A DNA stretch of 64,000 nt, taken from positions 248,001 through 312,000 of the IMG/VR virus record IMGVR_UViG_3300032245_001746; one strand, 5' to 3'. The notes beneath the pieces are model-generated. The model saw only the letters and a program-made list of their open reading frames with translations. It made no database searches and had not been told where the DNA came from. Positions 14,727 through 47,856 of the stretch are shown here, one piece after another (within the stretch, counting starts at the first letter, position 1; every line of letters starts with the position of its first letter). A program made the position numbers and the translations under genes.

Positions 14727-15779
14727 GTTGAATTGTACAATCAAACTTCAATCGATTTTGAATTCTGATCCGTCTGGAAGTTCAACTTTTGTGACATTTG
14801 GAATAAGTCCTTGTTCGCGACTGTCAAACAGTGCGGAACGCAGATCTTGTTCGTTTGGATTTGGCCAATGAATTGAGTTTGCTCCCTCAGTATGAGAGAT
14901 CAAAATACAAACTCCATCGTCTTCGTAATGAGCCTTCATCAATTCGTCGACGATATCGTCTTCAGAAGTGTAAAGTGTTCCGTCGATTGCAATTAATCGC
15001 ACCATTGATCGTTTCCTTTGAGGTTGACGTGTTTTGTATCAATGGATTGTACAATCAAACTTCAGTCAACAATCCAGACAATTTTGCCAGTGCCTTTAAC
15101 AAAAGCAACCTCTTTGCCATCCTGTTTCACACATACGGGGCATCCGTCCATGCTATTTTCGGCGGTTCGAAGTCCGTCCTGAACGCATTTTTCAACAGCT
15201 TTACGATCAGGCAGATTATTCGTTGGATGTGTGGTTCCGTTGTAATGCACTGAATACATTGCGTTTTCCCCTGGATTACCTGTGATTGTTCTGAGAGGGG
15301 ATTGTACAATCAAACTTCAATCCCAACTTACAAGGTCCCAGCGAACCTCACCTGTATCTCGCAGGATTTCGAGCATTTGAATTGCTTGCAATGGAGTGGC
15401 TTGTTCTACTTTTCCACACATGTATCCATTAAATTCTGGATAAACGACACGTTCAGATTGTCTTACAGGCACACCCGTGAAGTCGGCAAACAAATCAGGA
15501 CTTATGAAATGTTCGTATTGCGGTTTGCAGACGGTTCGAATATGTCCAGCAATACAACGTTCAAGACTCCACATGTCAAATGAGTCTTCATTAACATTCT
15601 TCAAAATGTCAATGGCTTTTTGCACATTTGGATAGATCATTTGCTCATTCCGTTTTGTTTGGGGCTGATATCGATATCGGTTCATTGTACAATCAAAATT
15701 CATTGATTAAGTACAAGAGAAAACGGCAAAGATGGCGTACATCCCTACCGTTTTTCAGTTCTAAAGTTTGGGAGCTTGA

Positions 15780-15851
15780 TCAAACTGAAGAACGATTTCG
15801 ATTTCGAATTTTTCGCAGGACGATTCCTGTCAGCAGGAACAATGAAATCAT
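15780..15851 (-). CDS. 23-aa hydrophobic/cationic peptide MISLFLLTGIVLRKIRNRNRSSV
   Basis: Own element (15890), GGAG RBS, ATG, then terminator at 15721-15755. Confidence 0.5.
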   Translation of the reverse strand: MISLFLLTGIVLRKIRNRNRSSV

Positions 15852-16374
15852 TTGTTTACTCCGTTCGGGTGAAGGGCTGATACGGTTACATTGTACAATC
15901 AAACTTAATTAATTAAGTATAAGAAAAAACGAATGAGGTTCTTACTCTCATTCGTTTTTTCTTTTTTTCATAGAGGAGACTATGCGGCGTAGATTAGTCT
16001 CTCAGCACTCTTATTTCCCTGCAACATTTGGGTTGACCATCACCAAAATTAGGTCTTGTTGTTTAAGTACAACAAGCAAAACTAATTATTTTGTAGTACA
16101 TCAACTCATTGTACAATCAAACTTCAACCGCCAATACTCCAATGAGATGGCTTTGTTGGTTTTTGAATGGTCACATATCGTCTTCCATCAACAATTCTGA
16201 TGGTTTTGACACTTCCATCTGGCAATCTCACCGTTCCAGATCCATTCGAACAACGAGTTTGTGTGTCATGTCTGTCATGTGTGTCGTAATAGCCACCATA
16301 TAGGTTTTTGCTCATGTTTGTTTCCTTCTGACATCGTCATATTGTACAATCAAACTTCATTGATTAAGTATAAG

Positions 16375-16404
16375 AAAAAACAGGAATGTTTCATTCCTGT
16401 TTTT
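16375..16404 (-). terminator. Intrinsic terminator
   Basis: AAACAGGAATG/CATTCCTGTTT stem with T-run. Confidence 0.85.
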
Positions 16405-16509
16405 AGCGATTTTTGGATAAAATTAGTGTTTTACTCGTTACTTATACAGTAGTATATACTAACGTGGTATACCTTTGTATAAGAACATCGCCAAACGCTC
16501 TACACTAAT
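16405..16509 (-). ncRNA. Pseudoknotted RNA motif, copy 1
   Basis: AUUAGUGU-AGAGCGUUU-GGCGAU-hairpin-CGAGUAAA-ACACUAAU-A-rich-AUCGCU; homologs at 32811 and 33386. Confidence 0.75.
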
Positions 16510-16553
16510 CCAGCTTTATCAATACCCTAAAGCTGGAAATCGGGATAAATTAG

Positions 16554-16626
16554 TGGTGCCGGTGGGAATCGAACCCACGACCATCGGATTAAAAGTCCGG
16601 TGCTCTACCAACTGAGCTACGACACC
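16554..16626 (-). tRNA. tRNA-Lys(UUU)
   Basis: GGTGTCG/CGGCACC acceptor stem, TAGCTCAGTTGGTAGAGC D arm, CTTTTAA anticodon loop, GTTCGATTC T loop; CCA not encoded. Confidence 0.95.
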
Positions 16627-16652
16627 AATACTGTCAGATTGTACAATCAAAC

Positions 16653-16892
16653 TTACCAGCCGTAATCGGATGGATCGAAACAAGACATGTCTGGATCTGT
16701 ATCTAGTTCCAGATCTAAATCCTCATCCAGATATTCATCCAAATAGCTGTCATTACAGCAACCACATGGACAATACTGATCATATTCCAGATAGGAAAAA
16801 TACAGATCTTCCAATTCGAGTTCTTCACGAACTTGTTCTTCTCTTTCGAGACGTTGTTCTTCGTTGAATTTTGCTACCAGGTTTTTTGACAT
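16653..16892 (-). CDS. Very acidic small protein with CPCGCC
   Basis: True start likely ATG after AGGAGA RBS (MSKNLV...); D/E-rich C-terminal half. Confidence 0.7.
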   Translation of the reverse strand: MSKNLVAKFNEEQRLEREEQVREELELEDLYFSYLEYDQYCPCGCCNDSYLDEYLDEDLDLELDTDPDMSCFDPSDYGW

Positions 16893-17233
16893 TGTTGTTC
16901 TCCTGAAGCAGGATTGTACAATCAAACTAAATCATAGCAGCATTTCGAGCCGCACATTTTCGTGCATAGTGCAATGATGGAGAATCACGTTTCAGTACAA
17001 TTAAACCCTTTTTCTGAGTTTCATACATCCAGGTAACGCAGATTGCCTGGTTGACTTCTCCATTCTGATTTTCAATTTCCACTTCAGTTTCGCCAACAGG
17101 AATTTCTTCCTGTTCTTTCATGGTGGGAATGTCGTATCCCATGAAATCATTGGCTAACGCATGGAAATAAATCCATGATACTGTGTTTTTTGGAAACGCA
17201 TCGTAATGAAACAATCGCATTTGATTTGATCCT

Positions 17234-17297
17234 ATAGGTGGATATTACAGCAAGGTGTTTCACCTTTGTGTCTTATTTTGCTGTAATATCCACCTAT
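17234..17297 (-). promoter_or_regulatory. 20-bp perfect inverted repeat forming the 5' leader of ORF 16927-17220
   Basis: ATAGGTGGATATTACAGCAA ... TTGCTGTAATATCCACCTAT between element 17304 and the RBS. Confidence 0.75.
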
Positions 17298-17905
17298 CAT
17301 CAGATTGTACAATCAAACTAAGTGGTATCCCAATTTTCTTTCCAGAAAAGTGGCCAGGATTCTTCTGAATACCACGCTTCCCCCCACGATGGAGAGTCGT
17401 TTTCGTTGACTTCTTTCACTTTATCAGGATATTTTTCACATGCCTGATCAAATGAAATTGATGTTTCATAAACGGCATCGTGCCATTTCATGGTTTGATG
17501 ATCGATTTTGTTTCCAGGCAGAACCTTAGAACCGTTCGGAAAATAATATCCTCCCGGCTTGACTTCTGTCATTGCATCAGTCAATTCCTTTTCAGGATAA
17601 CTACCTTGAGGCACAAGCAGAATTTTCATTGTGTATTCCTTGTGAAGTGATAAATCTCAATTGTACAATCAAACTTCATCGATCGGACTGATCTGGACCG
17701 TTTCCATATGGACCAACATATTTTGTTGATTCTGGTTTAGAAACGGGATCTGTCAAAGCTACACCGTTGCCGTATGGACCAACGTAATCAGATTTTTTCT
17801 TTTCGTCAACCTGAACGTCGATTTTAATTGTGATTGTCATGATTGTTCTCTTTGAGATTGTGATATCACTACATTGTACAATCAAACTTCATTGATTAAG
17901 TACGA

Positions 17906-17940
17906 CAAAAAATGCATGGATTTATTTCCATGCATTTTTT
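17906..17940 (-). terminator. Intrinsic terminator
   Basis: AAATGCATGGA/TCCATGCATTT with T-runs. Confidence 0.85.
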
Positions 17941-18183
17941 GTTTTTCAATATAGGAGAAGAAATCAGATTTCAGGGGGAGCACGATTATTAATCATGGAT
18001 GTGTCCAATATTGGATCGGGCTGCGGCGAATATTAGAGATGAAAAGAAAGAAATTTATGTTTTAGGTCATGTCCTCATGGTAGTTTCTCCTTGACTAGTG
18101 GTTTTTGTTTTAGTTAAGTTTAACTTTTCTAACGTTCGTTGCATCGCAACATTGTACAATCAAACTTCATTGATTAAGTACAT

Positions 18184-18215
18184 AAAAAAACAGAGATAAA
18201 TTAATATCTCTGTTT
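18184..18215 (-). terminator. Intrinsic terminator
   Basis: AAACAGAGATA/TATCTCTGTTT. Confidence 0.85.
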
Positions 18216-18298
18216 TACAACACGACTACGTATGGAACATTTATGTCAGCTTATTTGCTGGTATTGTTTTTGGGTCCAATCGAGTCGGGTGTTGTATC
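18216..18298 (-). ncRNA. Putative ~83-nt sRNA, copy 2
   Basis: Near-identical to 14644-14726; differences fall in the loop and small hairpin. Confidence 0.7.
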
Positions 18299-18626
18299 AA
18301 TGGATTGTACAATCAAACTCACTTCGTGAAGCTCAAAAGTGAAGCTACAAATCCAACAAAACACCACAAAATCAACCAAATATGAGCCAATTTGATTGAA
18401 ATTGGCAGTTTTTCTTTTTCTACCCAATGACCAATTGAGATGAAAATCACGAGAGAAGTCACCAACATTGCAAAAATAGCTTGGAATGTTGTCATGTTTG
18501 TTTCCTTGTTTGATTTTTGATTCACTTCGATATCGGTTCATTGTACAATCAAACTTTTTATTGTTTTAACAAAAAAAACAGGGATATTTCTATCCCTGTT
18601 TAATCGATTCTCTGAGATTTCTCAGA

Positions 18627-19037
18627 TTATGCAGCTTCTGCCGTTGTCGTCGGTTCCAGAACAACAGTTTCGACGGTTTCTTCTGCCGTTTCCGTTGTTT
18701 CGAGGACAACAGTTTCAGTTTCTTCGTCCGTTGGCAGTTCGACGTTCAGGTGTTCGCAGATCAGTTCGAGCATATCTGCGTTCTTGTCCGTCTTCGCGTC
18801 AACAATCGTGTCGATCAGAGAGGTAACAATTGTTCCCTTGAGGAACTGGAGAAGATAGTAACAGGCGAGTTCTGCGTCAGAACCCTGTTCCAGTGTCGCC
18901 ATGAACTTGGCAAATACTTTTGCCATTGTCTTGTCGATTGTGCCGCCCTGTGAGTTCTTATTCTTAGAACCCTTCGGGCGTCCACGTCCACGCTTAGGAG
19001 CTTCGACGTTTACAGTTGTTTCGGCTGAATTTCCCAC
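18627..19037 (-). CDS. AT-hook protein with acidic tail, paralog 1
   Basis: KRGRGRPKGSKNK AT-hook; E/T-rich C-terminus; terminator at 18571-18601. Confidence 0.75.
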   Translation of the reverse strand: MGNSAETTVNVEAPKRGRGRPKGSKNKNSQGGTIDKTMAKVFAKFMATLEQGSDAELACYYLLQFLKGTIVTSLIDTIVDAKTDKNADMLELICEHLNVELPTDEETETVVLETTETAEETVETVVLEPTTTAEAA

Positions 19038-19111
19038 GGCAGTAACCCTTTCAGAATTGTTTTTGACTTGTCAACACCGTTGTTGACATCGTCATATTGT
19101 ACAATCAAACT

Positions 19112-19190
19112 TCAAAGCCCTTCTCAACTTAGAGAAGGAAGTTTGACCTGACTCTTCCGAGTCATCTTTGAGTCATCCTTATGAGGAATC
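19112..19190 (-). ncRNA. Two-hairpin non-coding cassette upstream of the AT-hook gene, copy 1
   Basis: GACTC/GAGTC and CCTTCTC/GAGAAGG stems between elements 19191 and 19096; homolog at 34086-34154. Confidence 0.5.
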
Positions 19191-19262
19191 ATTGTACAAT
19201 CAAACTTAATTGATTTAAGGAATAAAAAAAGCAGAGATGTATTATCTCTGCTTTATAATAAA

Positions 19263-19336
19263 TGTCCCCATCAGGGATCGAACCTGAAACCTACTGCTTA
19301 GAAGGCAGTTGCTCTATCCAATTGAGCTACGAGGAC
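19263..19336 (-). tRNA. tRNA-Arg(UCU)
   Basis: GTCCTCG acceptor, ACTGC-CTTCTAA-GCAGT anticodon arm, GTTCGATCC T loop. Confidence 0.93.
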
Positions 19337-21195
19337 AAAAGAAACAGACCGATTCAGCATTTCACTATCAATCAGGTGATACGCCCTTACTGGAACTGAT
19401 ATCCAATATTGAATATCAAAAGACGTTTTAAAGTGAAATTTTTTATTAATCCAGTTTATCAGAATTGCTCAGTCTGTTTCTAACTTCAAATTGTACAATC
19501 AAACTATGCTGCGAGTCCAATTCGTTGATTCAATGAATTGAAGACACTTTCAACAAGTTGCTGTCCTGGAATCGGAAGATATTGCAACGTGAGAAGTCCA
19601 TCGGTTTCAAGATCAAAAACAGACCCTACGTCTTCCATTTTGAATTCATAGGATTTCTGATTTGTGCATCTGACATAAAGTTCAACTCCTTTTTCAAAGG
19701 AAAGAAGTTTTGAACTTGTAGAATCATTTGTCAACAGAACGAAAAAAAACATGTTTGTTTCCTTGTGTTGTTTGAACCGACATCAACACATTGTACAATC
19801 AAACATCACCAGCCGAATTCGATTTTTGACCGAACTTCATCAGACAATCCAGCTACAAAAACGGTCAAAGAAAAATCTTTGATCAATTTTCTGTAAACTT
19901 TGACACAATCAACAAAAGTTTTACAATCAATGTGAAAATCACGGAAATTGTCATTGTAGCCAAAAACATAGAATTCTGTTTTTGGTTTTGGTCTGGATTC
20001 GACACAGCCGCATTTTTCGCCATCAACACACAATGCGTCCAAAAATCCTTTTTTTGCACGCCGATGTGCTTGCCACCATAGTGGACTTTTGTACTTTGGT
20101 GAAAAAACATCACCACAACTTTCACAAACAACATTGTACAGTGGAAGGTTCATCAGTGTTCTCCTTGATGACGAATCATTGTACAATCAAACTTTTTTGA
20201 TTTAATCAATAAAAAAGGAGGGTTTCCCCTCCTAGTAGTTTTAAATTGTAGAACGCTGTTTGCTAGAGTCCGAATTGATCCAGCAATTCTTCCAGACGAC
20301 GCAATTCTCGTCGGTTCAAGCGATATCCAACAGACTTCAATCCGATAAGTCGGTCGAGTTCTTCCATTTTTCTTTTTTCCAGAAGGGAGTGAAACAAATT
20401 GAACAACGTCACATTGTACAATCAAACTTCTTCAGTTGAAACAACTGTAAATGAGTTGTCAACATATTGATTGTCTGAATTGTCTGGAATTTCAATGTCT
20501 TCAATGAGATCTTCTACAGTCTCACCGTCCTGGACAGTCAATTCGGTTTCAAATTTCACCGAATATGTGACACGAATTTTCTTTGGCATTTTTGTTTTCC
20601 TGAGATTCACTAGATCAGAGATATGAGTACATTGTACAATCAAAAACCAGAAAACGCATCGTAGTATTTACTGAATGGTTGAGTTGTAGCAATTTCTTCA
20701 AGATTTTCGTTGGAAATCCAGCGAGAAAACGTTGAGTCGATATCGGTTGTGAATCTGATTAAACTGCGATCTTCATCGCGATAAATCAAAACTCCCACAT
20801 GATTTAACAAAGTTTCCTGATCTTCCACTTCTTCTTTTTTCATATTGTCATCAAAATCAAAAACTGGTGCTTTTTTGATTTTGACATAAACAACATTATT
20901 TTTTGGCATGAAAGATCTCCGATAAGTAGAGATAGATATTAAGACACAAAGCCCGCATTTTGTTTTGTTATTAGGTACATTACATGTGTCTTAACACTTA
21001 TCCCTCGATATGAGTACATTGTACAATCAAACTTTATTGATTAAGTATAAATAAAAAACGTGAATCGTCTGGTAACGATTCACGTTTTAATTTTAATTTT
21101 ATTTAAAAATCTGAATACGCTCACATAATTCATTTTTGGTTGATTAGTCCAAAAATTGCTTTAGGAAGTCCAACCCTACTTAGACTCCTGCTAAA

Positions 21196-21363
21196 TTATG
21201 TGAGCCACCTGGGCAGTGATATAGAACACCAACGGTACTTGGCGAATTCCCGTTGGGTCTTGCTGTATTTTTCAACAGCTTCTTGAGATTCAAAATTAAG
21301 AAAGGGTTTTTCTTCAATGAATCCTACAACCACTGCCAGGATGATGAAAACCATCCTGAACAT
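21196..21363 (-). CDS. 55-aa membrane-anchored peptide (not in ORF track), paralog 1
   Basis: MFRMVFIILAVVVGFIEEKPFLNFESQEAVEKYSKTQREFAKYRWCSISLPRWLT; AAGGAG RBS; homolog at 39014-39184. Confidence 0.7.
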   Translation of the reverse strand: MFRMVFIILAVVVGFIEEKPFLNFESQEAVEKYSKTQREFAKYRWCSISLPRWLT

Positions 21364-21669
21364 TTCTTTTTCTCCTTGATTGAGATATCAGAGAATTGTA
21401 CAATCAATCTTCGATAACGCCCGTACTGAATGTGTAAACGTTATCGGCATCTTCGTCATTGTAGATCTCAAATTCATTTTCAAGAGATTCAATCTCTTCA
21501 GTATTCAACGGACGTTGAAATTGATTTTCAGCCAATTCTTTCAAGCGAATTTTTGCTTCATCCCAAGATGAAACCGCTGTACAAGCACCCAATGAATTGT
21601 TGTGAATTACACAAACAAACAACATTTCTTTTTCTCCTTGATTGAGATATCAGAGAATTGTACAATCAA
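21359..21669 (-). repeat. Identical ~49-bp leader (element+RBS+ATG) at 21359-21407 and 21621-21669
   Basis: AACATTTCTTTTTCTCCTTGATTGAGATATCAGAGAATTGTACAATCAA twice, ahead of unrelated genes. Confidence 0.9.
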
Positions 21670-23316
21670 ACTCAGAGTTCTTCCAATCCAAGACAATCAA
21701 CAAAAGCCTTGACCAAATCACCATGAACACCACAATGAAGAACCTTGCCATCTGGATTGGTAAGATCAAATCCGTCACCATCGAGACATGGAAGAATGGA
21801 AAGAACGTGATTTTCCTGTCGATCGTAAATCCGAACAACATTGTTCTGAGGAATAACCTCAGTTGCGATATCAAATCGCTCATTAGAATCAGCAGCAGAT
21901 TCCAGACGGTCCTGAACAGAATTGGAATTACACATTTTTTTGTTCCTTTGAGTTGTGTGTTGTTCCGATATCGGAAGATTGTACAATCAAACTTCTTCAA
22001 GTGGCATTTCTCGTCCATATTGTTTAACATAATTAAACATATGAACATTAAAAATCATAGATGGATCAAATGGTGTTTCATTCCATTTTATGATTTTGTA
22101 GTTTGATCTAACAGGACGATAAATACCAAGATCAATCCAACGTGATGTATCTCGATTTTCGATATTTGCTGAAATCCAATTTCCAACCACAACTCCATCC
22201 ACCGCTACGAAAAAGCAATTTGGATTTATTGTGCTTTCAAGATATTGAATTTTCATTTCGTCTCGGTAATAGAGTTTCTGCCACTGGCATTGAAACAGAA
22301 TCAATTCCTTCGCCCAATGTTCCAATAGTAAACAATTTGATTCCAGTTGGAGACATTACATCCCAATCACGACGATTGTCTGAGTTTTTCAGACAAATCA
22401 GCCCGCTGCGTTTTTCAAAACGCCGAATTGAATCTGGTTTTTGTATTGGTTTTTTCCCGGAAAATTTAGATAGCAAGTAAGTTCGGATCATTGTCTCTCC
22501 AGTGTTGTTCCGATATCGAAGGATTGTACAATCAAACTTTATCAATTGATTTTGAAGAACGCAATACGATACGTTTCAATCAAAATCAAAGATACAAATC
22601 CAGAAAGCACAACCATTGAAAGAGATTTAAAGTTGACTTCTGGATTCATTACCATGTTGTTAAAGAAAACTACAATCATGCCAATGAAAAAACTCATCAG
22701 AATTTGAAGAAATCGCAAAAATCGACTCATGATTTTTTATGTTCCTGCATTGAAGGAATTGTACAATCAAACTTCCCAAGAGCACTCTGTTTCATGAAAT
22801 TGATTCAGGCATTCTCTTGAACAAAAAGATGGATCATCAGCAAATTCTGATTTAATCCTACCATCAAGAATATGTTTTCCACAAATATGACAACAAAACA
22901 TTTCTTTCAAATGATCAAGAATTGCTTGTTCAAGATTAGCAAAATGAGAAATCAGATTGCAAGTTTCAATTCCGCCACCAGAAAAGCAACTGGAAGCTAT
23001 TTCTTCAGCTTGTTTTTCAAGAGTATTGTGTCTTTTTACTTTTGACAAAGTCAATTGAAATTGTACAAAAGTATCAAGCAAAGCTCTAGCTTGAATATCG
23101 TTCATGTTGTTCTCCTAAGAGGAGATTGTACAATCAAACTTCAATTAACTGAAATCCATTTTCTCCAACCAATCAATGAAAACAACCAGAGCCAAGCTGA
23201 AAGCAAGAATGATTGGAAATCCAAGACAAATCAGATAATATGCAAATCCAACCCATACTGTGGAATATGCCAAAAGAGCTTTTTTCATTGTTTTCTCCTG
23301 AAACAGGATTGTACAA

Positions 23317-23691
23317 TCAAACTTCATCAATTGATTTCAAATGATCATTAAATTGTTGCATGAGTGAACGAATGTTCTCTCTTCCAACTGTATTTGCTGA
23401 ATGAACATAGAAATCAAAAGGTTTTGTGATATTTTTAACAATCCAATTGGCAACATCTTTGCCGGTTTTTGAGTTTTCACCAAGATCATGATCAAAAAAG
23501 ATAAGATCATATACATTTGACGAAAGATATGCAATTGCTTCGTCATAATTGCGAGCAATATGAACGTTTCGTCGATTTGCAGCAATGTATCTTCTTTGAT
23601 CTTCATTGAAATTGGGAAGCATTGCCTTTTCGCGATATCGAAAAGAACAAACATAACTAAAATCACGTTCATCATCAATGAAAAGAATCAT
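23317..23691 (-). CDS. Cyclic-phosphate-processing receiver-like domain protein
   Basis: LFIDDER, FFDHDLG, TGKDVANWI, VHSANTVGRENI. Confidence 0.75.
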   Translation of the reverse strand: MILFIDDERDFSYVCSFRYREKAMLPNFNEDQRRYIAANRRNVHIARNYDEAIAYLSSNVYDLIFFDHDLGENSKTGKDVANWIVKNITKPFDFYVHSANTVGRENIRSLMQQFNDHLKSIDEV

Positions 23692-38898: not shown

Positions 38899-38937
38899 TA
38901 AAAAAAAGAGCGTGATTGTTATTATCACGCTCTTTTT
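38899..38937 (-). terminator. Intrinsic terminator
   Basis: AGAGCGTGAT/ATCACGCTCT stem with T-runs; related to the terminator at 21054-21088. Confidence 0.85.
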
Positions 38938-39013
38938 ATTTATTTATTTAGAAATTCATAAGTAGCTACTGGTTCACACATTTAATTAGTCAGGGCTTTA
39001 GCTAACTAATCTT

Positions 39014-39184
39014 TTAAAAATGTGCGAGCCAACTAGATCGTGAACTCTTAGACCAACGAAAAATTGCGAATTTTCGTTGTACTAGACTATATTTTTCAAT
39101 AGCCGTCCAGATTTTATTAAAAACAAAAGAGGGTTTTTCAACAAAACAGAGAATTACAATCAACATAATGAATATATTGAACAT
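39014..39184 (-). CDS. 56-aa membrane-anchored peptide (not in ORF track), paralog 2
   Basis: MFNIFIMLIVILCFVEKPSFVFNKIWTAIEKYSLVQRKFAIFRWSKSSRSSWLAHF; AAGGAG RBS. Confidence 0.7.
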   Translation of the reverse strand: MFNIFIMLIVILCFVEKPSFVFNKIWTAIEKYSLVQRKFAIFRWSKSSRSSWLAHF

Positions 39185-40758
39185 GATTTTCTCCTTACAT
39201 AAGAAATTTCTTATTCTTATGTGTAAAAATTATGTAAGACTAAATCGGGATGGATCAGGACATGTCCTTCTTATTTTTTATTAATCAAATAATTATTAAT
39301 TATTAATTAAAAAATTAATAATTAATAATTTGGCGCACATGGATTTGATTTAAAATCCTGATGAAATGAGATCAGAGTTTGGTTTATTTGGTTTAAGTAC
39401 AATATCTGAGTCGATATCGTTAATAACTGTTGAATTTTTTGGATTTAGTTTCATTTTTCACATTTTTCTTTATTCAGTTGATTTTTTACTGTGAAGATTT
39501 GTTGTACAACAAGAATCATTGCTTCGTGAGCATCTTCTTGAAAATCAAAAACTATTGAAGAGAACGAGACATTTTTGAATTTCAGAGTGAATCTGAATTT
39601 AGATGAATCTTTATACAGATATGATTGATTAAGTTCAATCATATCTGTAACTTGCATAATATGATTTGTGTATGGAATTCTGACCATACTTTCCATTGGA
39701 TTTTTTTCATCATGAAGAAACTTCAGTGTTTCAACACTTTTTGGTTTTTCAGCAATTGAAATAACATCATCATGAAGAGAATAGGTTCCATTTTCAAGAG
39801 ATTTGAGTGTATTTTGAGAAATATTGTTTAAATTCATTAGAAGTTGAATTAGGCTAAGAGCCTGATCCAGTTCAATTGGTTCTGAGTAGAAATCAGCCAG
39901 ATTATTTCCTGTATAAACATGTACATTATATTTTCCGGGTTCAACAAGACTTGATGAGTAGTCAATTTTGGTAATTTCTTGTAATTTAGAAATTACGATT
40001 GAGGTATTAACCTTTGGAAAGGTTAGAAAGTTTCCAGTTTTGGCAAAAGTGGCGATAGTTGTCATTGTTAATAATTTCTTGAAATTGAAAGGAGTTGATA
40101 TCGTTGTATTGTACAATCAAACTTGGTTTTACTTTTTCATTTGATTGAGATCATCAATAAAGCTTTGTATCATAGCGTATACAACCCAGATTGGACCGAG
40201 AAGTGTAGGAATGATATCTTTTCCAAGAAAAGCGAGAGCCATTGAAAATGCGAGCCAGAACAATCCGATGAAATACAGTATATCGATCATGAAATGATAC
40301 CTCCGTTATTAATTCCCAGTTCATTTTGAATTTTTCTCAATTTACTTTTTTCACCTTCTTGAAAGGAAAGAAGGTGTCTCATTTCTTGAAAATCGGATAA
40401 GAAATTTCGAATTTGTTGTCCATTCATATTTTTGAATGTAGATTCTAAAATAAGATCTGGTGTATTTCTTTTTTCTGACAATCCAAGAATTTCAATTACG
40501 AGATTTTGGTTTGTTACCATAAAAACGCAATTTGTTGCTCTTTCGTTCATGGAAAAGAGTTTAATTTTTTGGTTATCAACATGAGTTTGTCCAAAAAAGA
40601 TGGATGTTGTATCTGATTCGAAATATGGATTTCCGGACCAATTTTTGACTTTTGGACCGAGCCACACAGTAATGGAGGTTGCATTATTTTGAATTGTTAT
40701 TTCCACAGTAAAACTCCAGAATTTAGTTTATTTGGATTAACATGTTTACATTGTACAA

Positions 40759-41319
40759 TCAAACTTTGTGATCATTTTGAATAATTTCGTCATATTGTAT
40801 TAAGCAACCATTTGAATCTTCAATAAAGATCAGGTTATTATTTTGATCATATTTGCGTTTTTCCCACCAACCATTTGAATCTTCAATAAAGATCAGATTA
40901 TTATTTTGATCATAATCATATTTTACTGAATAATCATTTGAATTTTTATAAAGAATTAGATTATTATTTTGATCATATTTGTGTTTCATGTGAAACGAGT
41001 ATGATCGTTTAATCGTCAGTTCGTTATTAACAATTCCAAATAGTTGATAATATTCTTCTTTTGGAATTTCTCTGATGACACGTAGTTTATTTGTTACAGA
41101 TTTATCACAAGAATGGATACATTCGCCTAAATCTTCAATTTCGAGTAATTTGAAATTATGTTGAATTGAATAATGGTTCAATACGTTAATTGGATTTTTA
41201 CAATAGTGGAATCCATATTTGCACATAACTGGAGTTCTTGGTAATTCGTAGGTTTTTCCGATTTCGAATTTATGATTTAGACAAATGAAATCATAGGTTG
41301 CTTTGAATCCGGTTTTCAT
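40759..41319 (-). CDS. Family B (DUF7666-like + YD-like repeats)
   Basis: MKTGFKATYDF..GFHYC; C-terminal ~21-aa repeats YDQNNNLIFIEDSNG. Confidence 0.8.
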   Translation of the reverse strand: MKTGFKATYDFICLNHKFEIGKTYELPRTPVMCKYGFHYCKNPINVLNHYSIQHNFKLLEIEDLGECIHSCDKSVTNKLRVIREIPKEEYYQLFGIVNNELTIKRSYSFHMKHKYDQNNNLILYKNSNDYSVKYDYDQNNNLIFIEDSNGWWEKRKYDQNNNLIFIEDSNGCLIQYDEIIQNDHKV

Positions 41320-41346
41320 TTGTTACTTTCCTTTATTTGTTAATAA

Positions 41347-41862
41347 CTATTTTTGACCAAATTTGGCATCGATTAACTTATTATTTTGATCATATTCATA
41401 TTTTGACCACAAGCCATTTGCGGATTCACAATAAGTTTCATTATTATTTTCATTAAATTCGTATTTGGTCCAATCACCAAATGAATCTTCATAACGAATA
41501 CGATTATTATTTTCATCAAATGTTTGTTTTGTCCAATAACCAGCTTCATAATTAGTTGTCAATTGATTGTTAATAATTCCAAATAGTTGATAATATTCTT
41601 CTTTTGGAATTTCTCTGATGACACGTAGTTTATTTGTTACAGATTTATCGTATTTGGTGATTGATATGCCAAGATCTTCAATTTCGAGCAAACGAAAAGT
41701 GTGTTTAATTGGATAATAACCAAGAACATCGATTGGATTTTTACAATAATGAAATCCATATTTACAAGGAATTGGAGTTCCTGATAATTCGTAGGTTTTT
41801 CCGATTTCGAATTTATGATTTCTGCAAGAGAAATCGTAGGTTGCTTTGAGTCCAGTTTTCAT
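41347..41862 (-). CDS. Family B protein
   Basis: Same domain and repeats. Confidence 0.8.
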   Translation of the reverse strand: MKTGLKATYDFSCRNHKFEIGKTYELSGTPIPCKYGFHYCKNPIDVLGYYPIKHTFRLLEIEDLGISITKYDKSVTNKLRVIREIPKEEYYQLFGIINNQLTTNYEAGYWTKQTFDENNNRIRYEDSFGDWTKYEFNENNNETYCESANGLWSKYEYDQNNKLIDAKFGQK

Positions 41863-41865
41863 TTG

Positions 41866-42396
41866 TTACTTTCTATCTTTTTGTTTGTGATAAGAGAAAT
41901 AACTAGTTACATTGTTATTTTGATCATATGTACGAATTGAATGATAACCAGATGAATCTTCAATATATGTTAGATTATTTCTTTCATCATATTCATATTT
42001 TAGCCAAGCACCATATGAGTTTTCAAGATAAATCAGATTATTATTTTGATCATATTTGTGTTTTACCCAAATACCATTTAGTCCATTAATAGTCAGTTCA
42101 TTATTAATCATACCAAATAATTCATAATATTCTTCTTTTGGAATTTCTCTTACAACACGTAATTTATTTGTTGCAATTTTATCTTCATGATAGATTGATA
42201 TGCCAATATCTTCAATTTCCAATAGATGGAAATCATTTTGAATTGGATAATATCCAAGAACATCAATTGGTTTGACGCAATAATGAAAACCATATTCGCA
42301 AGGAATTGGAGTTCCTGGTAATTCATAGGTTTTTCCGATTTCGAATTTGTGATCTCTGCAATAGAAATCGCGTGTAGCTTTGAATCCGATTTTCAT
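41866..42396 (-). CDS. Family B protein
   Basis: MKIGFKATRDF...; same repeats. Confidence 0.8.
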   Translation of the reverse strand: MKIGFKATRDFYCRDHKFEIGKTYELPGTPIPCEYGFHYCVKPIDVLGYYPIQNDFHLLEIEDIGISIYHEDKIATNKLRVVREIPKEEYYELFGMINNELTINGLNGIWVKHKYDQNNNLIYLENSYGAWLKYEYDERNNLTYIEDSSGYHSIRTYDQNNNVTSYFSYHKQKDRK

Positions 42397-42975
42397 GATT
42401 TTTTCTTTACTGCATTTAGACAATGGTGGAAATTATTTGCATCACAGCGTTTATTTGGATTCGGATAATATTTTTCGAACCAATTTTCAATCATTTTATG
42501 ATCAATGAGTTCTGATGTTGGATTCCAAAAACAAACGACACAACCGTCTAAAATGCACCAATTAAGGGAGATACAAACTGATCTATCGTCATATTTTCCT
42601 ACAGTTATTAGGAATCCATTAATTTGGTCCCAATTTTCAATTTCTGGATATTGGCAATAACTGCTTTTTTTGCAAAATTTTGACCATAATTCATGGTAAG
42701 CAAAATCATCTGCTTCAACAAGAAATTGTGTAACAGCAATACGACTTTCTGGGTTATTATATTTTTCAAAAAATTCGCGATTCATAATTTTCCCTTTAAA
42801 TCGAATTTAGTTGCAAGATTGAATTTCGAAATATGAAGAGCAGCAATCGCAACCTGGTTCAATTCTTACAACTTGTACTTTTCTGAGTTTAGATCTTTTT
42901 GATCCATGAGGTTTATAGGATTGGACGAATTTTTTTCTTCCGAATTTTTCCAGAGCATCCCAGGGATGATCAATT

Positions 42976-43098
42976 TTAGAAATTGGAAGATTTTTTGGAT
43001 TTACAGCACCTGGAATTCCGTAGTCGATAAGTTTTACCAATTTCAAACTTATAACCTCGGCACACGAAATTATAAGTGGCTTTAAATCCTGTTTTCAT
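42976..43098 (-). pseudogene. Truncated family B 5' fragment fused out of frame to a different gene
   Basis: MKTGFKATYNFVCRGYKFEIGKTY then unrelated sequence overlapping ORF 42807-43046. Confidence 0.75.
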
Positions 43099-43567
43099 TT
43101 GAAATGCTTTCATGTTTAGGCAGCTTTTTGCTCATAAGAGCAAGTTAGACAATATTTATTGTCATTAATAGATATTGTCCAGTCAACACCAACTTTGTTA
43201 TTTCTTGGAGAAAAGAAACAAACTGAATCTGTCAAATGGTTGTCATTAATTCCAGCGTGAATTAATAATCCTTTTAGAGTTCTTGGACCTTGACCAAAAT
43301 AACCCCAACAAACGCCATCGAAAATGCAAAATCCATTTTCTCCAACGAATTTAACTCTTTCATGAAAGTTAGAATAAGTTACACCATTAGATGTTCTTTT
43401 GCTATACCATCGGTATCCAATAATTTCATGAATTTTTCCGAGACGATCAATATGTTTTGGAGCATTTTCTTCAACTTTTGAAGAAGATCCATATTCGTAG
43501 CGATATTTAACCATTATTAAATACTCCAAAAACACAATAAAAGTGAAGACGTATTTATATTGTACAA

Positions 43568-43591
43568 TCAAACTTTGAATCCAGTTTTCAT
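43568..43591 (-). pseudogene. Family B start (MKTGFK) cut off at the element
   Basis: ATG AAA ACT GGA TTC AAA G|TT TGA: six family B codons run directly into element 43559. Confidence 0.7.
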
Positions 43592-43616
43592 GATGTATTT
43601 TCTTTGTTTGATTATA

Positions 43617-44189
43617 CTATAGATCAGTAAAAACTATTCCATCAGGATTAATTTTCAAGTTTGCCAGATTTGATGATGGATGTTTGAAATAAAACATTTC
43701 CCACAAATTATTGTTAAACACTAATTTCATGATTAGTTCTTTATTTTCATTATAGAAATATTCTTGGCATGGTTTTCCTTCGTAAAAAACTTTACGATTT
43801 AAGATATTTCCGTTTTCAAAATAAATTGAGATTTCCATTATCTCAATTTCATTTCGAATAATAAGTGTTCGATTTGATGAATCATAAGAAAAATTTCTTC
43901 CCAATAGATTCATGATTTCATCAGGATTAGTTATTTCTCTTACAATTCGAATGTGATTAGAAAAAGAATAAGATTGATAATGTTCAGTAACTTTGGATAA
44001 GTCTTCGATTTGTAACAATTTAAATGTTGGACAAATCGAGACATAATTAAACATATCTTTTGGATTACGAAAATAAAGTAATCCATTTTTAAATCGTTCA
44101 ATTTTACCTGATACTTGATATTCTTTTCCAATTGACCATTTTGATTCAAAACATTCTTCATTTACTGTTGCTAAATAACCTTTTGACAT
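43617..44189 (-). CDS. Divergent family B protein
   Basis: KGYLAT, FKLLQIEDL, NHIRIVREI. Confidence 0.6.
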   Translation of the reverse strand: MSKGYLATVNEECFESKWSIGKEYQVSGKIERFKNGLLYFRNPKDMFNYVSICPTFKLLQIEDLSKVTEHYQSYSFSNHIRIVREITNPDEIMNLLGRNFSYDSSNRTLIIRNEIEIMEISIYFENGNILNRKVFYEGKPCQEYFYNENKELIMKLVFNNNLWEMFYFKHPSSNLANLKINPDGIVFTDL

Positions 44190-44218
44190 AATTTTCTCAG
44201 TTTGAAAAATTTTGTTGA

Positions 44219-44752
44219 TTACATTTTCCTATTAATGCCATTTAAAGCATCTTGCCAATAAGAAAGTGAGGTGGTTAATCTTTTGTTTTCTGTAGAACAG
44301 ATTAATTTGTTTAGAAAATCAAACAATTTTTGAGCAAGTTTTTCTTGACCAAGAATTGTAGCAGAAGCTAAAAATCTTGTAATTCTTAGTGAATTGTGAT
44401 TAAATTCTGCCCATGTGTATAATTGTTTATCCAAATTTGGAAGAATTTGAATGTTGTCATTTTCAAATGAAAGACCAAGAAATTTCAAAAATCTTTTTGA
44501 TGCTTTTTCGAAATTTCGAATTAATTCAAGATCTGTTCGAAATAGTTCGATAGTTTCTCGATCTAACAATGGAGCATCTTTATTAAAAGCGCTTGCTTTT
44601 TCTAAAGGAAAAATAACTTGAATGAAGTTATGGCATTCTTCGAACCAATCATCATTTTGATTCAAAACTTGATCAAAAGTTAAGTTGTAAACTTGTTCAT
44701 TTTTATAAAATGAAATCAATCTTTTATTCAAGCTATTCTCCTTTTTCTTCAA
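44219..44752 (-). CDS. Opioid growth factor receptor (OGFr)-like conserved domain protein
   Basis: HNFIQVIFPL..S.FN..APLL and NHNSLRITRFL. Confidence 0.75.
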   Translation of the reverse strand: MKKKENSLNKRLISFYKNEQVYNLTFDQVLNQNDDWFEECHNFIQVIFPLEKASAFNKDAPLLDRETIELFRTDLELIRNFEKASKRFLKFLGLSFENDNIQILPNLDKQLYTWAEFNHNSLRITRFLASATILGQEKLAQKLFDFLNKLICSTENKRLTTSLSYWQDALNGINRKM

Positions 44753-47343
44753 TACATGAGTTCTTCATTTTTTTCTTCTTCTGCAAATTTAGATAAGCAT
44801 CTAGGGCAATCTGCATGTGCTTTAATATGCAAAGAATCAATAATTGAACAAATTTGTTCAATTATTGATTCTTCAACGCCTTCTTTTTCCAATATTGCCC
44901 AAGCTTTTTCTGCATCGGGACTCATTACATTATCTTCTGGTGGACCAGAGCAACCGGGAGGATATGACCAGCCAAACATTCCTGACATTTTTAATATTCC
45001 TGTTTTTTAGTAAAGTTTTTCAATTTCTCTGTATACTCCAGTAATAATGTTATTGTTTTTCAATTTCAAACTGTCATGAACTAGATCAGCAAGTTCTTTT
45101 GTTTCAAACTTCAAAACAATTGAATGAATTGCATTGCCAGATTTATGAGTCGTTGTTACGAAAATTTGATACATTGTTTGACTTTCTGAAAAGAGAGAAT
45201 ACTTGTATATCATTGGTAATTACTGTTGTAATGACCAACCATTCACTATAACAGCATAGTTACTTTACAAGTGTTGATTTTCGTGTCGTTTAATTTAGAC
45301 ACTGCTTTCTCAACACTAATAAGTGTGTTGAGTTTTGCCTGTTAGTTCACATTGTTAGTAGCATGTGGCTTTGATCGCCATGAAGGAATTTTCTTCATAG
45401 CAATTCCTTCATTCATTGCTTGGCGATCAAATTCATCCAGTACAATTGTTGCATTTGCTGGAATCGTTCCATATCCGCCACCAGAAGTTCTTGCAATTGG
45501 TTTACGTCTTACTGTATTACGATTGCGAGGCATCATTAATCTCCAAAGAATTATTGTTTAGAACCAACACTCACAGATTGTACAATCAAACTTCTGGACG
45601 GATTGTTGAAAACGATACTGGTATAATTTCCTGAAAACAAAGTATCCAATTTTCACTTATAGCTTGTTCAAGCACATCATAATGAACAAGTGCTTGTTCA
45701 GCTTCCGAAACCGTATTAAAAATAAAATCAAACGCAAATTCGTAAACTTCAGGATCGGAGTTTGGAACAATCAGTCTTTTATTTTTGCTTTCATCTTCAA
45801 CAAGAATTCGCCACACATAATTCTTTTCTGAACTTAATTCCATTATGTGGAATTCATTAATTTTTTTAAGCATGTTGTTTTTCTTAAAAAGTTGGAAGAA
45901 AAAAAAGACATAACACTTATGTCATCAATGATCAATTGTTAAGGAATGTTTTTCATAAGCTTCCAGACTTGTAATTCTACAAATCCAGATGCAATTCGTT
46001 TTTGTGTATCACGAAAAACATCAGGAAGCAAATTCAGCAATTGGAGAACCCATTCATTTTCTGAATGAACTTTTACAATAATTTCATTCTCTTCGAGAGG
46101 AATTTCTGGCACATTAACTGTAACCTTTCCCCAAGATTCAATTAATTGATTATCTTCAACAACATAAGCGATAATACACAATCGTTTAGATTGATGATAA
46201 AGATCGGTCTTCAACTCAATTTCAACATTTTCATTAAATGCTTTAATTGTTGTTCTCATTTTATGATCCAAAAAAGAAAGTTTTGTTTCAACATCAACAC
46301 ATTGTACAATCAAACTTAAAAAGCTTGAATGTTTTCAGAGTTATTATTTCTCCAATGAGCCAAGCAAAAATGTTGTTTTAATTCTGCATTATAACCAATT
46401 ACGGCACAAGGAGAATTTTCTTGAATATTGTTGGGATACAAAATCGCAACATATTCAAATGGATTATCTGTAGTGTGGAAATTAACAATTTCTCGTACAG
46501 TTTTTGGTAAAAGAACAAATGTTGTTGGAATATATTTTTCATCTTCTTCAATATGAAAGATAACTCCAGATCTGAAGTTTGAATACGTATTTTTGTAACA
46601 TGGAATTTTATAAACTCCAAATTCATTAATTGAGTGTTCTGTTAGAACAAAGTGTGGATTTACCAATGACCATTTTGGTAAACCATCATTATTCTTCATT
46701 GAGAGCAACAATTGCAAATTAATTAATTTGCCATTAAATTTTAGAACGCCACCACTACTTGCTTTTAACAAAGCAGCATATTGCATTTCAGCAATAGTTC
46801 CAGATTCAAGTTGATCAATTAATTTTTGATTAATTGATGCTTTGGTTTCTTCTGAAACCAAAGCATCAACAATTGGATTTTCTGAATTTTGCAGTGGATG
46901 TACAGATTTAGTATGACGCTTAAAGAGATTAAACATAAATTGCTTTACTTTCTTTATCAAAATTTATTTTAAGGTCAGTGAGACATTTGTACAAATTTTA
47001 CAACATTTTGTTGTGCAATATACAGAGAATACAAAAGTGTGAAATTGTGATCTCCATAACGGCAACGTGCAATAATTCTGTTTTCAGGAACTGTCAAAAC
47101 GGCTTCATTTAGTGCTTGTGGATGACGATATTTAACTTGTTCTACAACAGAAAGAACAAGTTCAACTTCACCAAATCCAACTACTTCTTTTTCATTTGAT
47201 GAAATGTGAAATCCAAGAATATTTCCATATCCAACAGGATTTTCCATTGAATTAACAAAGGCACATGGAATGAAATTTTCAGTCATTTTGTGATCCAAAA
47301 AAGAAAGTTTTGTTTTACATCATTACATCAACACATTGTACAA

Positions 47344-47856
47344 TCAAACTTTACTTACATATTTGCGGTCAATTTCATTATTGTTTTCATCAAATTTTTG
47401 CCAATAGCCATTCGAGTTTTCAAAATAAATTTCATTATTATTTTCATCATATTCGTATTTCATCCAATAATTATCTGAATCTTCATAACGAATACGATTA
47501 TTTCTTTCATCAAATGTTCGTTTTGCCCAATAACCAAATTCATCAGTAGTTGTTAATTGATTATTAACAATTCCAAACAAAGAATAATATTCTTCTTTTG
47601 GTACTTCTCTTACAATTCGGATTTTATTTGTTACTGTTTTATTTCCTTCGGTGATTGATTCACCCAAATCTTCAATTTCCAATAATCGAAAATTATGTTT
47701 AATTGGGTAATAACCAATAACATCAATTGGTTTGATGCAATAATGAAAACCATAATTGCAAGGAATTGGAGTTCCTGGTAATTCGTAAGTTTGACCAATT
47801 TCAAACTTATGATCTATACACATAAAATCGTAGGTAGCTTTAAATCCGGTTTTCAT
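47344..47856 (-). CDS. Family B protein
   Basis: Same domain and repeats; stop inside element 47335. Confidence 0.8.
   Translation of the reverse strand: MKTGFKATYDFMCIDHKFEIGQTYELPGTPIPCNYGFHYCIKPIDVIGYYPIKHNFRLLEIEDLGESITEGNKTVTNKIRIVREVPKEEYYSLFGIVNNQLTTTDEFGYWAKRTFDERNNRIRYEDSDNYWMKYEYDENNNEIYFENSNGYWQKFDENNNEIDRKYVSKV

What the first reader, a model, noticed from the sequence alone, without database searches (positions are those of the whole stretch)
15672..47350. Families of leaders travel with the element but front unrelated genes
Seen (plus strand): identical 49 bp at 21359/21621; CGATATCGGTTC+element at ~15672/18528; GACATCGTCA(T/C)+element at ~16330/19085/24243/34060; CATCAACAC+element at ~19781/27918/46292/47326; TCTCCTGAA.CAGG+element at ~16899/23294; GATATGAGTAC+element at ~20620/21007; GTGTTGTTCCGATATCG at ~21957/22502; ~55-nt shared leader at 46257-46316/47283-47350. 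Downstream ORFs usually differ. Inference: expression modules (element to ATG) are copied or swapped independently of coding sequences.
Basis: seen in the sequence. Interest (0 to 1): 0.65.

Follow-up and report, generated by a model that had tools for sequence, protein, structure and literature searches.

The report
Repeated promoter cassettes shuffling megaphage genes
About 80 near-identical copies of a 17-base promoter-like signal head small genes in one arm of a ~531-kb uncultivated phage. Exchange between these copies has mixed promoter flanks, leaders and genes, much like the known "PeSL" cassettes of T4-type phages.

Summary
All eight shared-flank families sit at the stated coordinates, on the minus strand just downstream of an almost invariant 17-mer, AAGTTTGATTGTACAAT. 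The contig holds 73 exact copies of its 12-mer core, all in one orientation. Thirteen pairs share at least 10 nt after the core, against 0.11 expected.

- The first ~11 nt after the core belong to an extended promoter with consensus GTGTTGAT(A/G)TC. Several "leader families" are therefore promoter sub-variants. The CATCAACAC family is the consensus itself.
- Sharing that truly reaches the start codon exists in about five pairs. One is 49 nt at 100% ending at ATGTT. Another is a 78-nt terminator-to-ATG cassette pasted in front of a different gene. These pairs front unrelated ORFs.
- One pair (19108/34082) is a whole-unit duplication with diverged paralogues.

Close relatives show unit insertions, deletions and replacements whose junctions lie at the core. 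They also show block swaps of the 5 nt that follow it. The phage encodes a UvsX-like recombinase.

Best reading: an insulated early-promoter array whose repeats act as recombination or gene-conversion sites. This is a new variant of the PeSL system. The transcription start site and the polymerase remain unverified.

The parts
13373..62609 (-). Window part of an array of 76 promoter-like cores (AAGT-TTGATTGTACAAT, then a weaker GAT(A/G)TC box 6 nt later). All share one orientation. Density falls from about 31 per 10 kb to 3 per 10 kb.
21359..21407 (-). Core plus leader plus ATGTT. 49 nt identical to 21621-21669. Fronts a 55-aa membrane-like ORF (21196-21363).
21621..21669 (-). Second copy of the 49-nt module. 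Fronts an unrelated acidic 73-aa ORF (21404-21625).
46256..46317 (-). Core plus full leader shared with 47283-47351 (87%, one 7-nt indel). Similarity ends one base after the ATG. The 106-aa ORF is unrelated to its partner's.
47283..47351 (-). Partner of 46256-46317. Fronts a 103-aa ORF. The core's TGA is the stop codon of the upstream DUF7666-family ORF.
16315..16392 (-). Complete intergenic cassette: terminator hairpin, then cttatacttaatcaatg, core, leader, Shine-Dalgarno sequence and ATG. 92% identical to 24228-24305.
24228..24305 (-). Copy of the same cassette in front of a different gene. The cassette's ATG opens a 2-codon ORF and the real start lies 11 nt downstream (24214).
19058..19142 (-). 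Promoter plus conserved leader, 96.5% identical to 34032-34116. Part of a tandem two-promoter region (cores at 19203 and 19108) ahead of an AT-hook-like ORF (18627-19037).
34032..34116 (-). Partner of 19058-19142. Its ORF (33569-34009) is a diverged paralogue of 18627-19037, so this pair is a whole-unit duplication.
21957..21994 (-). Core plus a leader sharing CGATATCGGAACAACAC with 22502-22539, while the 5 nt after the core differ. The ORFs (87 and 84 aa) are unrelated.
15671..15700 (-). Core plus GAACCGATATCGA, shared with 18527-18556. The upstream flanks belong to different families.
18182..18319 (-). Promoter-driven unit of about 125 nt with no ORF: a long closing stem plus a terminator. 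90% identical to 14609-14747 and conserved in two relatives. Only the 5 nt after the core vary.
16553..16654 (-). Core fused directly to tRNA-Lys, which starts 11 nt after the core. In the relative L149 the same upstream flank and core front two protein genes instead.
36935..37438 (-). Two adjacent units (cores at 36998 and 37434) sharing the leader TA(C/T)AATCAAGGAAACAACAATG. The 36998 leader holds a 25-nt tandem duplication. The ORFs (95 and 131 aa) are unrelated.

Best explanation
The element is the core of a clade-specific promoter, most likely for early genes. It is a 17-nt nearly invariant block, AAGTTTGATTGTACAAT, that contains a -10-like TACAAT. A variable 5-nt word follows, then a semi-conserved GAT(A/G)TC box where transcription probably starts. 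About 80 copies, all in one orientation, head small and mostly orphan genes, tRNAs and short non-coding units in one arm of a ~531-kb T4-related megaphage.

Many copies directly abut or supply the stop codon of the preceding ORF. Some are preceded by an intrinsic terminator. Each gene is therefore an insulated expression unit.

The copies are long, identical direct repeats in a phage that encodes its own UvsX-type recombinase. I infer that they act as sites of ectopic homologous recombination and short-tract gene conversion. Exchange points fall in three places: the core, the GAT(A/G)TC box, and the conserved Shine-Dalgarno-to-ATG block. The pieces between these blocks (upstream terminator cassette, 5-nt word, leader body, ORF) then reassort semi-independently. 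That would produce 'leader families' in front of unrelated genes.

Shown: the repeat architecture, the statistical excess, the mosaic junctions in relatives, and the unrelatedness of the ORFs. Inferred: promoter function, start-site position, early timing, the polymerase involved, and the recombination mechanism.
For: Architecture:
- 73 exact 12-mer cores, all minus-oriented, confined to 261-318 kb of the contig.
- Eleven more cores on the 102-kb fragment G001, which lies on the same 530,789-bp scaffold.
- The logo shows 17 invariant positions plus the downstream box.
- Cores sit 15-60 nt ahead of start codons that carry Shine-Dalgarno sequences, and 10-11 nt ahead of tRNA 5' ends.
- 49 of 78 cores abut or contain the stop codon of the preceding ORF, and 14 follow a terminator-like hairpin.

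Flank families:
- Both flanks form families far beyond a column-shuffle null.
- Upstream and downstream families are not congruent. One terminator cassette pairs with six different downstream words.
- Similarity has sharp borders at the core and at the ATG.
- Leader-sharing pairs have unrelated ORFs.

Relatives:
- In L149 (89-96% identical), 12 of 24 cores are mosaic junctions. One is a clean one-unit deletion. One is a unit insertion that carries its own terminator. One unit has relocated 33 kb.
- Identity of adjacent units ranges from 83.5% to 99.3%.
- At four orthologous promoters the 5-nt word is replaced as a block while the flanks stay about 95-100% identical. Each replacement is a word used at another promoter (PWM-based chance 0.147 per event).

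Context:
- The genome encodes a UvsX-like recombinase, a Dda-like helicase, topoisomerase II and a small sigma-like protein.
- Published PeSL cassettes in T4-type phages behave in the same way (PMC2839356, PMC4122927).
Against: - No RNA data could be obtained, so promoter activity, start site and timing are untested.
- There is no conserved -35 element. The TG abuts the TACAAT hexamer without the usual spacer base, so this is not a canonical sigma-70 promoter.
- Only 14 of 78 copies have the stem-loop that defines PeSLs.
- The block-swap evidence rests on four events.
- Unequal divergence between units could partly reflect different selective constraint rather than different histories.
- Leader-sharing pairs are not clustered along the genome, so simple local unequal crossing-over does not explain them.
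Confidence: 0.65

Rival explanations
1. Whole-unit duplication followed by fast divergence of the small ORFs. Leaders stay alike because they are constrained, while the coding parts drift beyond recognition.
For: The 19108/34082 pair fits. The 85-nt promoter plus leader is 96.5% identical while the proteins are 34.5% identical over 84 aa. The orthologue of that ORF in L149 is only 74% identical in protein, while its flanks are about 97% identical.
Against: - Identity drops from 100% to background within a few bases of the ATG at 21407/21669 and 46313/47347. Gradual divergence does not make such a step.
- The proteins differ in kind: a hydrophobic membrane-like 55-mer against an acidic soluble 73-mer.
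- The true paralogue of the 21363 ORF, at 39014-39184, has a different upstream region.
- The cassette at 24228-24305 keeps a vestigial ATG ahead of the real start.
- Upstream and downstream families are incongruent.
Confidence: 0.1
2. Functional promoter or leader classes. A small repertoire of post-core words and leaders is kept by selection because each sets a particular strength, timing, mRNA stability or translational control. Similarity then reflects shared regulation, not copying.
For: - The post-core box is conserved in its own right. The commonest family (GTGTTGATGT, 5 copies) equals the consensus and recurs in a more distant relative before an unrelated gene.
- Several short leaders are hairpins pairing a complementary stretch with the Shine-Dalgarno sequence, such as TCCTGnttCAGGA and TCTCCTcttAGGAGA. 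These could arise by convergence.
Against: - Selection on function does not explain 49 nt at 100% that runs into the coding sequence, or a 78-nt cassette that includes the terminator.
- Best perfect-stem hairpins after the core are no better than at control offsets: mean 3.62 against 3.33-3.74.
- The block swap GTTGC to ACAAC in an orthologue destroys the hairpin GTTGCgatGCAAC.
Confidence: 0.15
3. A site-specific cassette system of integron type, in which the palindrome-containing core is the recombination site of a dedicated recombinase.
For: The layout resembles a cassette array: same-orientation small ORFs, each bounded by a conserved site that contains the 10-bp palindrome ATTGTACAAT. Whole units are gained and lost at that site.
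Against: - No tyrosine recombinase was found in the 422 kb examined.
- The one serine recombinase lies 170 kb away, next to a 400-aa ORF of unknown function.
- Junctions are spread over the core, the downstream box and the ATG block rather than one fixed crossover point.
- The site sits where a promoter should, including directly ahead of tRNAs.
Confidence: 0.04
4. Assembly artefact. Short repeats led the assembler to build chimeric or mis-ordered units.
For: The region is repeat-rich and comes from a metagenome.
Against: - Another assembly holds the same phage (ENA scaffold of 530,789 bp), and a Logan contig covers part of it. Both are 100% identical to the window over 6.2 kb, 6.3 kb and 2.7 kb, and these stretches include both long shared-leader pairs.
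- The repeats are 17-85 nt long.
- Colinear blocks are reproduced in contigs from two other projects.
Confidence: 0.02

Closest known systems
PeSL (promoter-early stem-loop) regulatory cassettes of T4-type phages (Arbiol et al. 2010, PMC2839356; Comeau et al. 2014, PMC4122927)
   Same: - A repeated early-promoter motif is concentrated in an orphan-gene-rich plastic region, usually immediately upstream of a small ORF.
- Some copies are combined with a terminator stem-loop.
- Insertions, deletions and replacements between close relatives are bounded by the cassette.
- The phage has T4-like recombination genes.
- The cassette runs through to the Shine-Dalgarno sequence and start codon.
   Different: - The core is a 17-nt nearly invariant block without a conserved -35 element, not a sigma-70 consensus promoter.
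- Only 14 of 78 copies have a stem-loop.
- About 90 copies share one orientation over roughly 240 kb of a ~531-kb genome.
- Exchange also occurs on both sides of a 5-nt word and at the ATG, giving mosaics below the cassette level.
- The core supplies a stop codon for upstream ORFs.
- Mini-circles were not tested.
Early-promoter motifs of jumbo phages that carry a virion RNA polymerase (phiKZ, AR9; review PMC7598289)
   Same: A highly conserved, phage-specific motif centred near -10 upstream of early operons that can be found by sequence analysis alone.
   Different: - No multisubunit polymerase signature (DFDGD motif, Rpb2 domain) was found in the 422 kb of this genome examined.
- The rest of the gene set is T4-like.
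- The motif is longer and is not simply AT-rich.
Promoters of single-subunit phage RNA polymerases (T7, SP6 type; from my own knowledge)
   Same: About 17 nt are almost invariant. A G often follows the block: 30 of 45 copies in distant relatives and the sparse region.
   Different: No T7-like polymerase was detected, but that search had no positive control. The base after the block is not strictly G in the dense region.
Integron gene-cassette arrays and lambdoid 'morons' (from my own knowledge)
   Same: Same-orientation small accessory genes behave as movable units. Morons bring their own promoter and terminator.
   Different: There is no attC-like site and no integron integrase. Here the repeated promoter itself is the exchange site.

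Membership tests
PeSL cassettes (T4-type phages) | Repeated early-promoter motif concentrated in a plastic, orphan-gene-rich region, mostly immediately upstream of small ORFs | tested here: met
   78 cores lie in 58 kb and none in the other 260 kb of the contig. The ORFs behind them are small and mostly lack family matches.
PeSL cassettes (T4-type phages) | Promoter matches the host sigma-70 consensus (-35, -10, AT-rich upstream region) | tested here: not met
   A -10-like TACAAT is invariant, but no position is conserved where a -35 would lie, and the TG abuts the hexamer. The host and its consensus are unknown.
PeSL cassettes (T4-type phages) | A stem-loop (terminator or attenuator) is part of the cassette | tested here: inconclusive
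   It is present in a subset. 14 of 78 cores have a terminator-like hairpin within 75 nt upstream. Seven of these share one cassette, hairpin plus cttatacttaatcaatg. 49 of 78 cores instead abut the upstream stop codon.
PeSL cassettes (T4-type phages) | Insertions, deletions and replacements between closely related phages are bounded by the cassettes | tested here: met
   L149 against the window: 12 of 24 cores are mosaic junctions, and unit deletion, insertion and relocation are all seen.
PeSL cassettes (T4-type phages) | The phage belongs to the T4 superfamily | tested here: inconclusive
   T4-like topoisomerase II, UvsX-like recombinase, Dda-like helicase, tail sheath, portal and a small sigma-like protein are present. 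The portal is only 25-30% identical to T4-like cyanophage portals and 50% to an uncultured 595-kb phage.
PeSL cassettes (T4-type phages) | Excised mini-circles carrying one chimeric cassette | not testable with these tools
   This needs reads or PCR.
Promoters of phage-encoded RNA polymerases | The phage encodes its own RNA polymerase | tested here: inconclusive
   No Rpb2 domain. No DFDGD motif in the contig or in G001. The T7-type search had no working control. About 109 kb of the genome was not available.
Integron cassette array | A tyrosine recombinase (IntI) and attC sites | tested here: not met
   No Phage_integrase domain in G000 or G001, and the control search worked. The repeat is a 17-nt promoter-like block, not an attC-type imperfect inverted repeat.

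The most novel reading that the evidence does not exclude
The ~30-nt extended promoter may be more than a passive substrate for homologous recombination. It could be a purpose-built joint for a recombinase-independent gene-cassette system, with four features:
- a stop codon built into the core;
- a hyper-exchangeable 5-nt word between two homology blocks;
- a second joint at the Shine-Dalgarno-to-ATG block;
- recognition by an as yet unknown clade-specific transcription factor or polymerase.
Such a system would let a half-megabase phage continually re-deal its early host-takeover and anti-defence genes, and retune each promoter by templated patch conversion.
Probability: 0.2. Interest if true: 0.7.

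Novelty: new variant of a known kind. Interest (0 to 1): 0.45.

Why it matters
- One 17-mer annotates about 90 transcription units of an uncultivated ~531-kb phage. It marks which half of the genome is under one promoter class.
- The comparison with relatives shows that promoter-mediated modular shuffling, described so far for classical T4-type phages of 170-250 kb, also operates in a huge phage. It works at a finer grain there: promoter word, leader and ORF move separately.
- This offers a concrete way for megaphages to turn over their large stock of small orphan early genes.
- The promoter matches no described consensus found in the literature searches. It is absent from the nearest sequenced huge phage. 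Identifying what reads it, host holoenzyme or a phage factor, is therefore a defined open question.

Tried and rejected
- **5'-terminal hairpin rule.** Many leaders looked like hairpins starting at the core. The best perfect-stem length (mean 3.62) is within the range of control offsets (3.33-3.74), and an orthologous swap destroys one hairpin. Not a general rule.
- **Restriction or nuclease target.** TGTACA is not avoided elsewhere in the genome, 49 observed against 54 expected.
- **Local tandem duplication.** Leader-sharing pairs lie a median of 18 promoters apart. Only adjacency is marginally enriched, 2 against 0.36, P about 0.05.
- **Known RNA families.** Only tRNAs were found.
- **Literature search for the motif.** Nothing relevant. 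Accession searches gave no description of the sample.
- **More of the metagenome record behind L149.** The record is not held.
- **Nearest phage record, LR756511.1.** Only chance-level matches to the core.
- **A second hyper-conserved motif in the other 260 kb.** None found.
- **Phage RNA polymerase.** Not found in 422 kb.
- **Integrase.** Absent.
- **Large protein searches and structure prediction.** Not used, because no claim here rests on them.

Full report
**What the element is**

Genes in this part of the window run on the minus strand. The "leaders" are the bases that follow it.

The 12-mer TTGATTGTACAA with up to one mismatch occurs 82 times in the window, against 2.1 expected. The window is bases 248,001-312,000 of a single 319,857-bp virus contig. 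That contig holds 73 exact copies. All are minus-oriented and all lie between 261,374 and 317,652. Density falls from 31 to 3 per 10 kb.

A logo of 81 copies shows 17 almost invariant positions. Next come five variable bases, then a weaker box G-A-T-(A/G)-T-C-A at +18 to +24. The purine at +21 is present in 78 of 81 copies. The consensus of the whole downstream stretch is GTGTTGAT(A/G)TC.

**Why it is read as a promoter**

- The cores lie 15-60 nt ahead of start codons that carry good Shine-Dalgarno sequences.
- tRNA-Lys and tRNA-Leu begin only 10-11 nt after the core. A start site must therefore lie within about 10 nt of the block.
- TACAAT followed by six to eight bases and then A or a purine fits a -10 element plus discriminator plus start.
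- No -35 position is conserved, and the TG abuts the hexamer.
- 49 of 78 cores abut or contain the stop codon of the preceding ORF. In 23 of these the core's own TGA is the stop. Fourteen cores follow a terminator-like hairpin.

All of this is inference.

**The genome**

PHROG and Pfam scans of the largest ORFs find:
- a DNA polymerase in two separate ORFs;
- T4-type topoisomerase II;
- a UvsX-like recombinase interrupted by a LAGLIDADG element;
- Dda-like helicases;
- a tail sheath, a portal and a tape measure protein;
- a 174-aa ORF with a sigma-70 region 2 match.

The portal is 50% identical to an uncultured 595-kb phage and 25-30% identical to T4-like cyanophage portals.

Exact-protein look-ups show that the same phage was assembled elsewhere as a 530,789-bp scaffold. 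That scaffold is 100% identical to the window over the stretches compared. The 102-kb record G001 carries eleven more cores on one strand and lies on the same scaffold. The promoter class therefore spans roughly 240 kb of a ~531-kb genome.

No Rpb2 domain and no DFDGD motif was found in the 422 kb available. The nearest sequenced huge phage lacks the motif. No other hyper-conserved motif exists in the remaining 260 kb of the contig.

**Checking the observation**

All eight items are at the stated places. I used a null that shuffles each alignment column, so it keeps the position-specific composition.
- Downstream flank: 13 pairs share an exact run of at least 10 nt anchored at the core, against 0.11 expected. 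Seven pairs share at least 12 nt, against 0.01 expected.
- Upstream flank: 11 pairs share at least 12 nt beyond AAGT, against 0 expected.

Run lengths cluster at 10-13 nt, which is the end of the downstream box, and at 36-38 nt, which is the start codon.

**Are the genes behind shared leaders related?**

All-against-all BLASTP of every minus-strand ORF of at least 30 aa finds two large paralogue families. One is a DUF7666 family with 8 copies. The other is a ~135-160 aa family with 11 copies. None of the leader-sharing pairs is linked, with one exception. That exception is 19108/34082, where AT-hook-like proteins are 34.5% identical over 84 aa.

The reverse also holds. Four members of the 135-160 aa family that sit directly behind cores all have different leaders.

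Pairwise alignments show step-like borders.
- 21407/21669 is 100% identical from the first base of the core to ATGTT, and unrelated on both sides.
- 46313/47347 is alike from AAGT to one base past the ATG.
- 16315-16392 and 24228-24305 share everything from the terminator hairpin to the ATG. At 24266 that ATG opens a two-codon ORF, and the real gene starts 11 nt later.

The true paralogue of the 21363 ORF, at 39014-39184, has a different upstream region. These facts rule out gradual divergence of duplicated units as the general cause. It does apply to 19108/34082.

**What the short families are**

It also occurs in a more distant relative in front of an unrelated gene.

In the duplicated ORF-less unit (18182-18319 and 14609-14747) and in the unit at 18163, everything from about +18 onward is conserved between phages while the five bases before it vary. 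This suggests that the 5-nt word lies outside the functional transcript. Several "leader families" are therefore sub-variants of the promoter itself.

**Relatives**

A pattern scan of metagenome contigs found close relatives.
- L149 has 24 cores in 10.6 kb and is 89-96% identical to window 10,135-19,253.
- L092 has 8 cores in 1.9 kb.
- L151 and L077 cover other parts of the region.

At 12 of the 24 L149 cores, the upstream flank is orthologous to one window promoter and the downstream flank to another or to nothing in this genome. Examples:
- L149:5466 joins the upstream flank, core and CCATT word of w15058 to the leader of w14744. This is a one-unit deletion whose crossover lies inside the shared GATACAA. 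L092 still has both units.
- L149:5860-6389 is an extra unit. It carries a third paralogue of the AT-hook gene plus its own terminator cassette.
- The core orthologous to w16650 drives two protein genes in L149, while here it is fused to tRNA-Lys. The second of those genes is 94% identical to the window gene at 49030-49278, 33 kb away.

Identity of adjacent units ranges from 83.5% to 99.3%.

At orthologous promoters the 5-nt word is either identical (10 of 13) or replaced as a block:
- GTTGC to ACAAC;
- CCATT to ACAAC;
- TCAAC to CCATT;
- GAACC to GATTC.

Each replacement is a word used at another promoter. The PWM-based chance of that is 0.147 per event. Four events is a small sample.

**Mechanism proposed**

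The upstream and downstream families are not congruent. Junctions fall in the core, in the downstream box and at the Shine-Dalgarno-to-ATG block. I therefore infer ectopic homologous recombination and short-tract conversion among about 80-90 direct repeats. A phage with its own UvsX-type recombinase is well placed to do this.

This matches the published PeSL model for T4-type phages. There, composite early-promoter and stem-loop cassettes in hyperplastic regions bound the insertions, deletions and replacements between close relatives, and can excise as mini-circles (PMC2839356, PMC4122927).

The differences are:
- a non-canonical, far more uniform promoter;
- a stem-loop in only a minority of copies;
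- a stop codon built into the repeat;
- mosaicism below the level of the cassette.

Jumbo-phage early promoters read by virion polymerases are an alternative analogue (PMC7598289). No polymerase gene was found to support that reading.

**Rejected ideas**

- A general 5' hairpin rule.
- Restriction-site avoidance at TGTACA.
- Clustering of leader-sharing pairs along the genome.
- An integron-like system: no tyrosine recombinase is present, and the one serine recombinase is 170 kb away.
- An assembly artefact.

**Verdict**

This is a new variant of a known kind of system, in an unusually large phage and with an undescribed promoter. The promoter function, the start site and the polymerase remain to be shown by experiment.

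Noticed in passing
window 14000-64000 (G000 260-320 kb): GC content falls smoothly from about 0.40 to 0.29, in step with promoter density (31 to 3 cores per 10 kb). The rest of the genome is about 0.27. The cause is unknown. Candidates are different codon use in small early genes and a recombination-linked bias.
   Followed up: no
window 18182-18319 and 14609-14747; L149:1286-1425 and 5466-5605; L092:1497-1636: A promoter-driven unit of about 125 nt without an ORF is present twice per genome and is almost invariant across three phages. It has a long closing stem (ACAACAC...GTGTTGT) and a terminator, so it is a candidate small RNA. It matches no Rfam family.
   Followed up: partly
whole contig G000: Strong avoidance of some palindromes: GGATCC 0 observed against 36 expected, GGCC 14 against 96, GCGC 23 against 84 in the first 260 kb. 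This suggests pressure from host restriction systems.
   Followed up: no
window 16553-16626, 48947-49020; G000 about 317,565-317,641: There are three paralogous tRNA-Lys(UUU) genes, 89-96% identical. Two have a core directly ahead of them. One follows a small gene that, in the relative L149, sits in front of a different tRNA-Lys copy.
   Followed up: partly
window 40759-47856, 58417-58974, 62618-63400 and beyond: Eight or more copies of a DUF7666-domain gene family and eleven copies of a ~135-160 aa family (for example 34889-35311, 31327-31773, 53169-53570) fill the sparser part of the array. Several of these ORFs end in the TGA of the next core.
   Followed up: partly
window 18627-19037 and 33569-34009: A fast-evolving protein family with an RGRPKG (AT-hook-like) motif sits behind two tandem promoters and a highly conserved structured leader. 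A relative has a third copy.
   Followed up: partly
window 4610-6781; G000 60772-63108; G000 18627-21260 and 33042-35666: A RecD/Dda-like helicase and the UvsX-like recombinase each carry a LAGLIDADG insert that looks like an intein. The DNA polymerase is encoded as two ORFs about 12 kb apart.
   Followed up: no
G000 90359-91970: A small serine recombinase (Resolvase domain, 206-aa ORF) lies directly next to a 400-aa ORF whose function was not examined. It is about 170 kb from the promoter array.
   Followed up: no
window 36935-36998: The leader behind the core at 36998 contains a perfect 25-nt tandem duplication that includes the Shine-Dalgarno sequence and ATG.
   Followed up: no
window 9401-10498: A UDP-galactopyranose mutase gene (GLF domain, E 2e-63) lies just outside the promoter array, in the low-GC part of the window.
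   Followed up: no
window 17960-18150 (unit behind the core at 18163): A strong Shine-Dalgarno sequence and ATG are followed by a stop after three codons. The 60-nt leader is 100% conserved in L149. This may be a decayed gene or a non-coding or regulatory unit.
   Followed up: no
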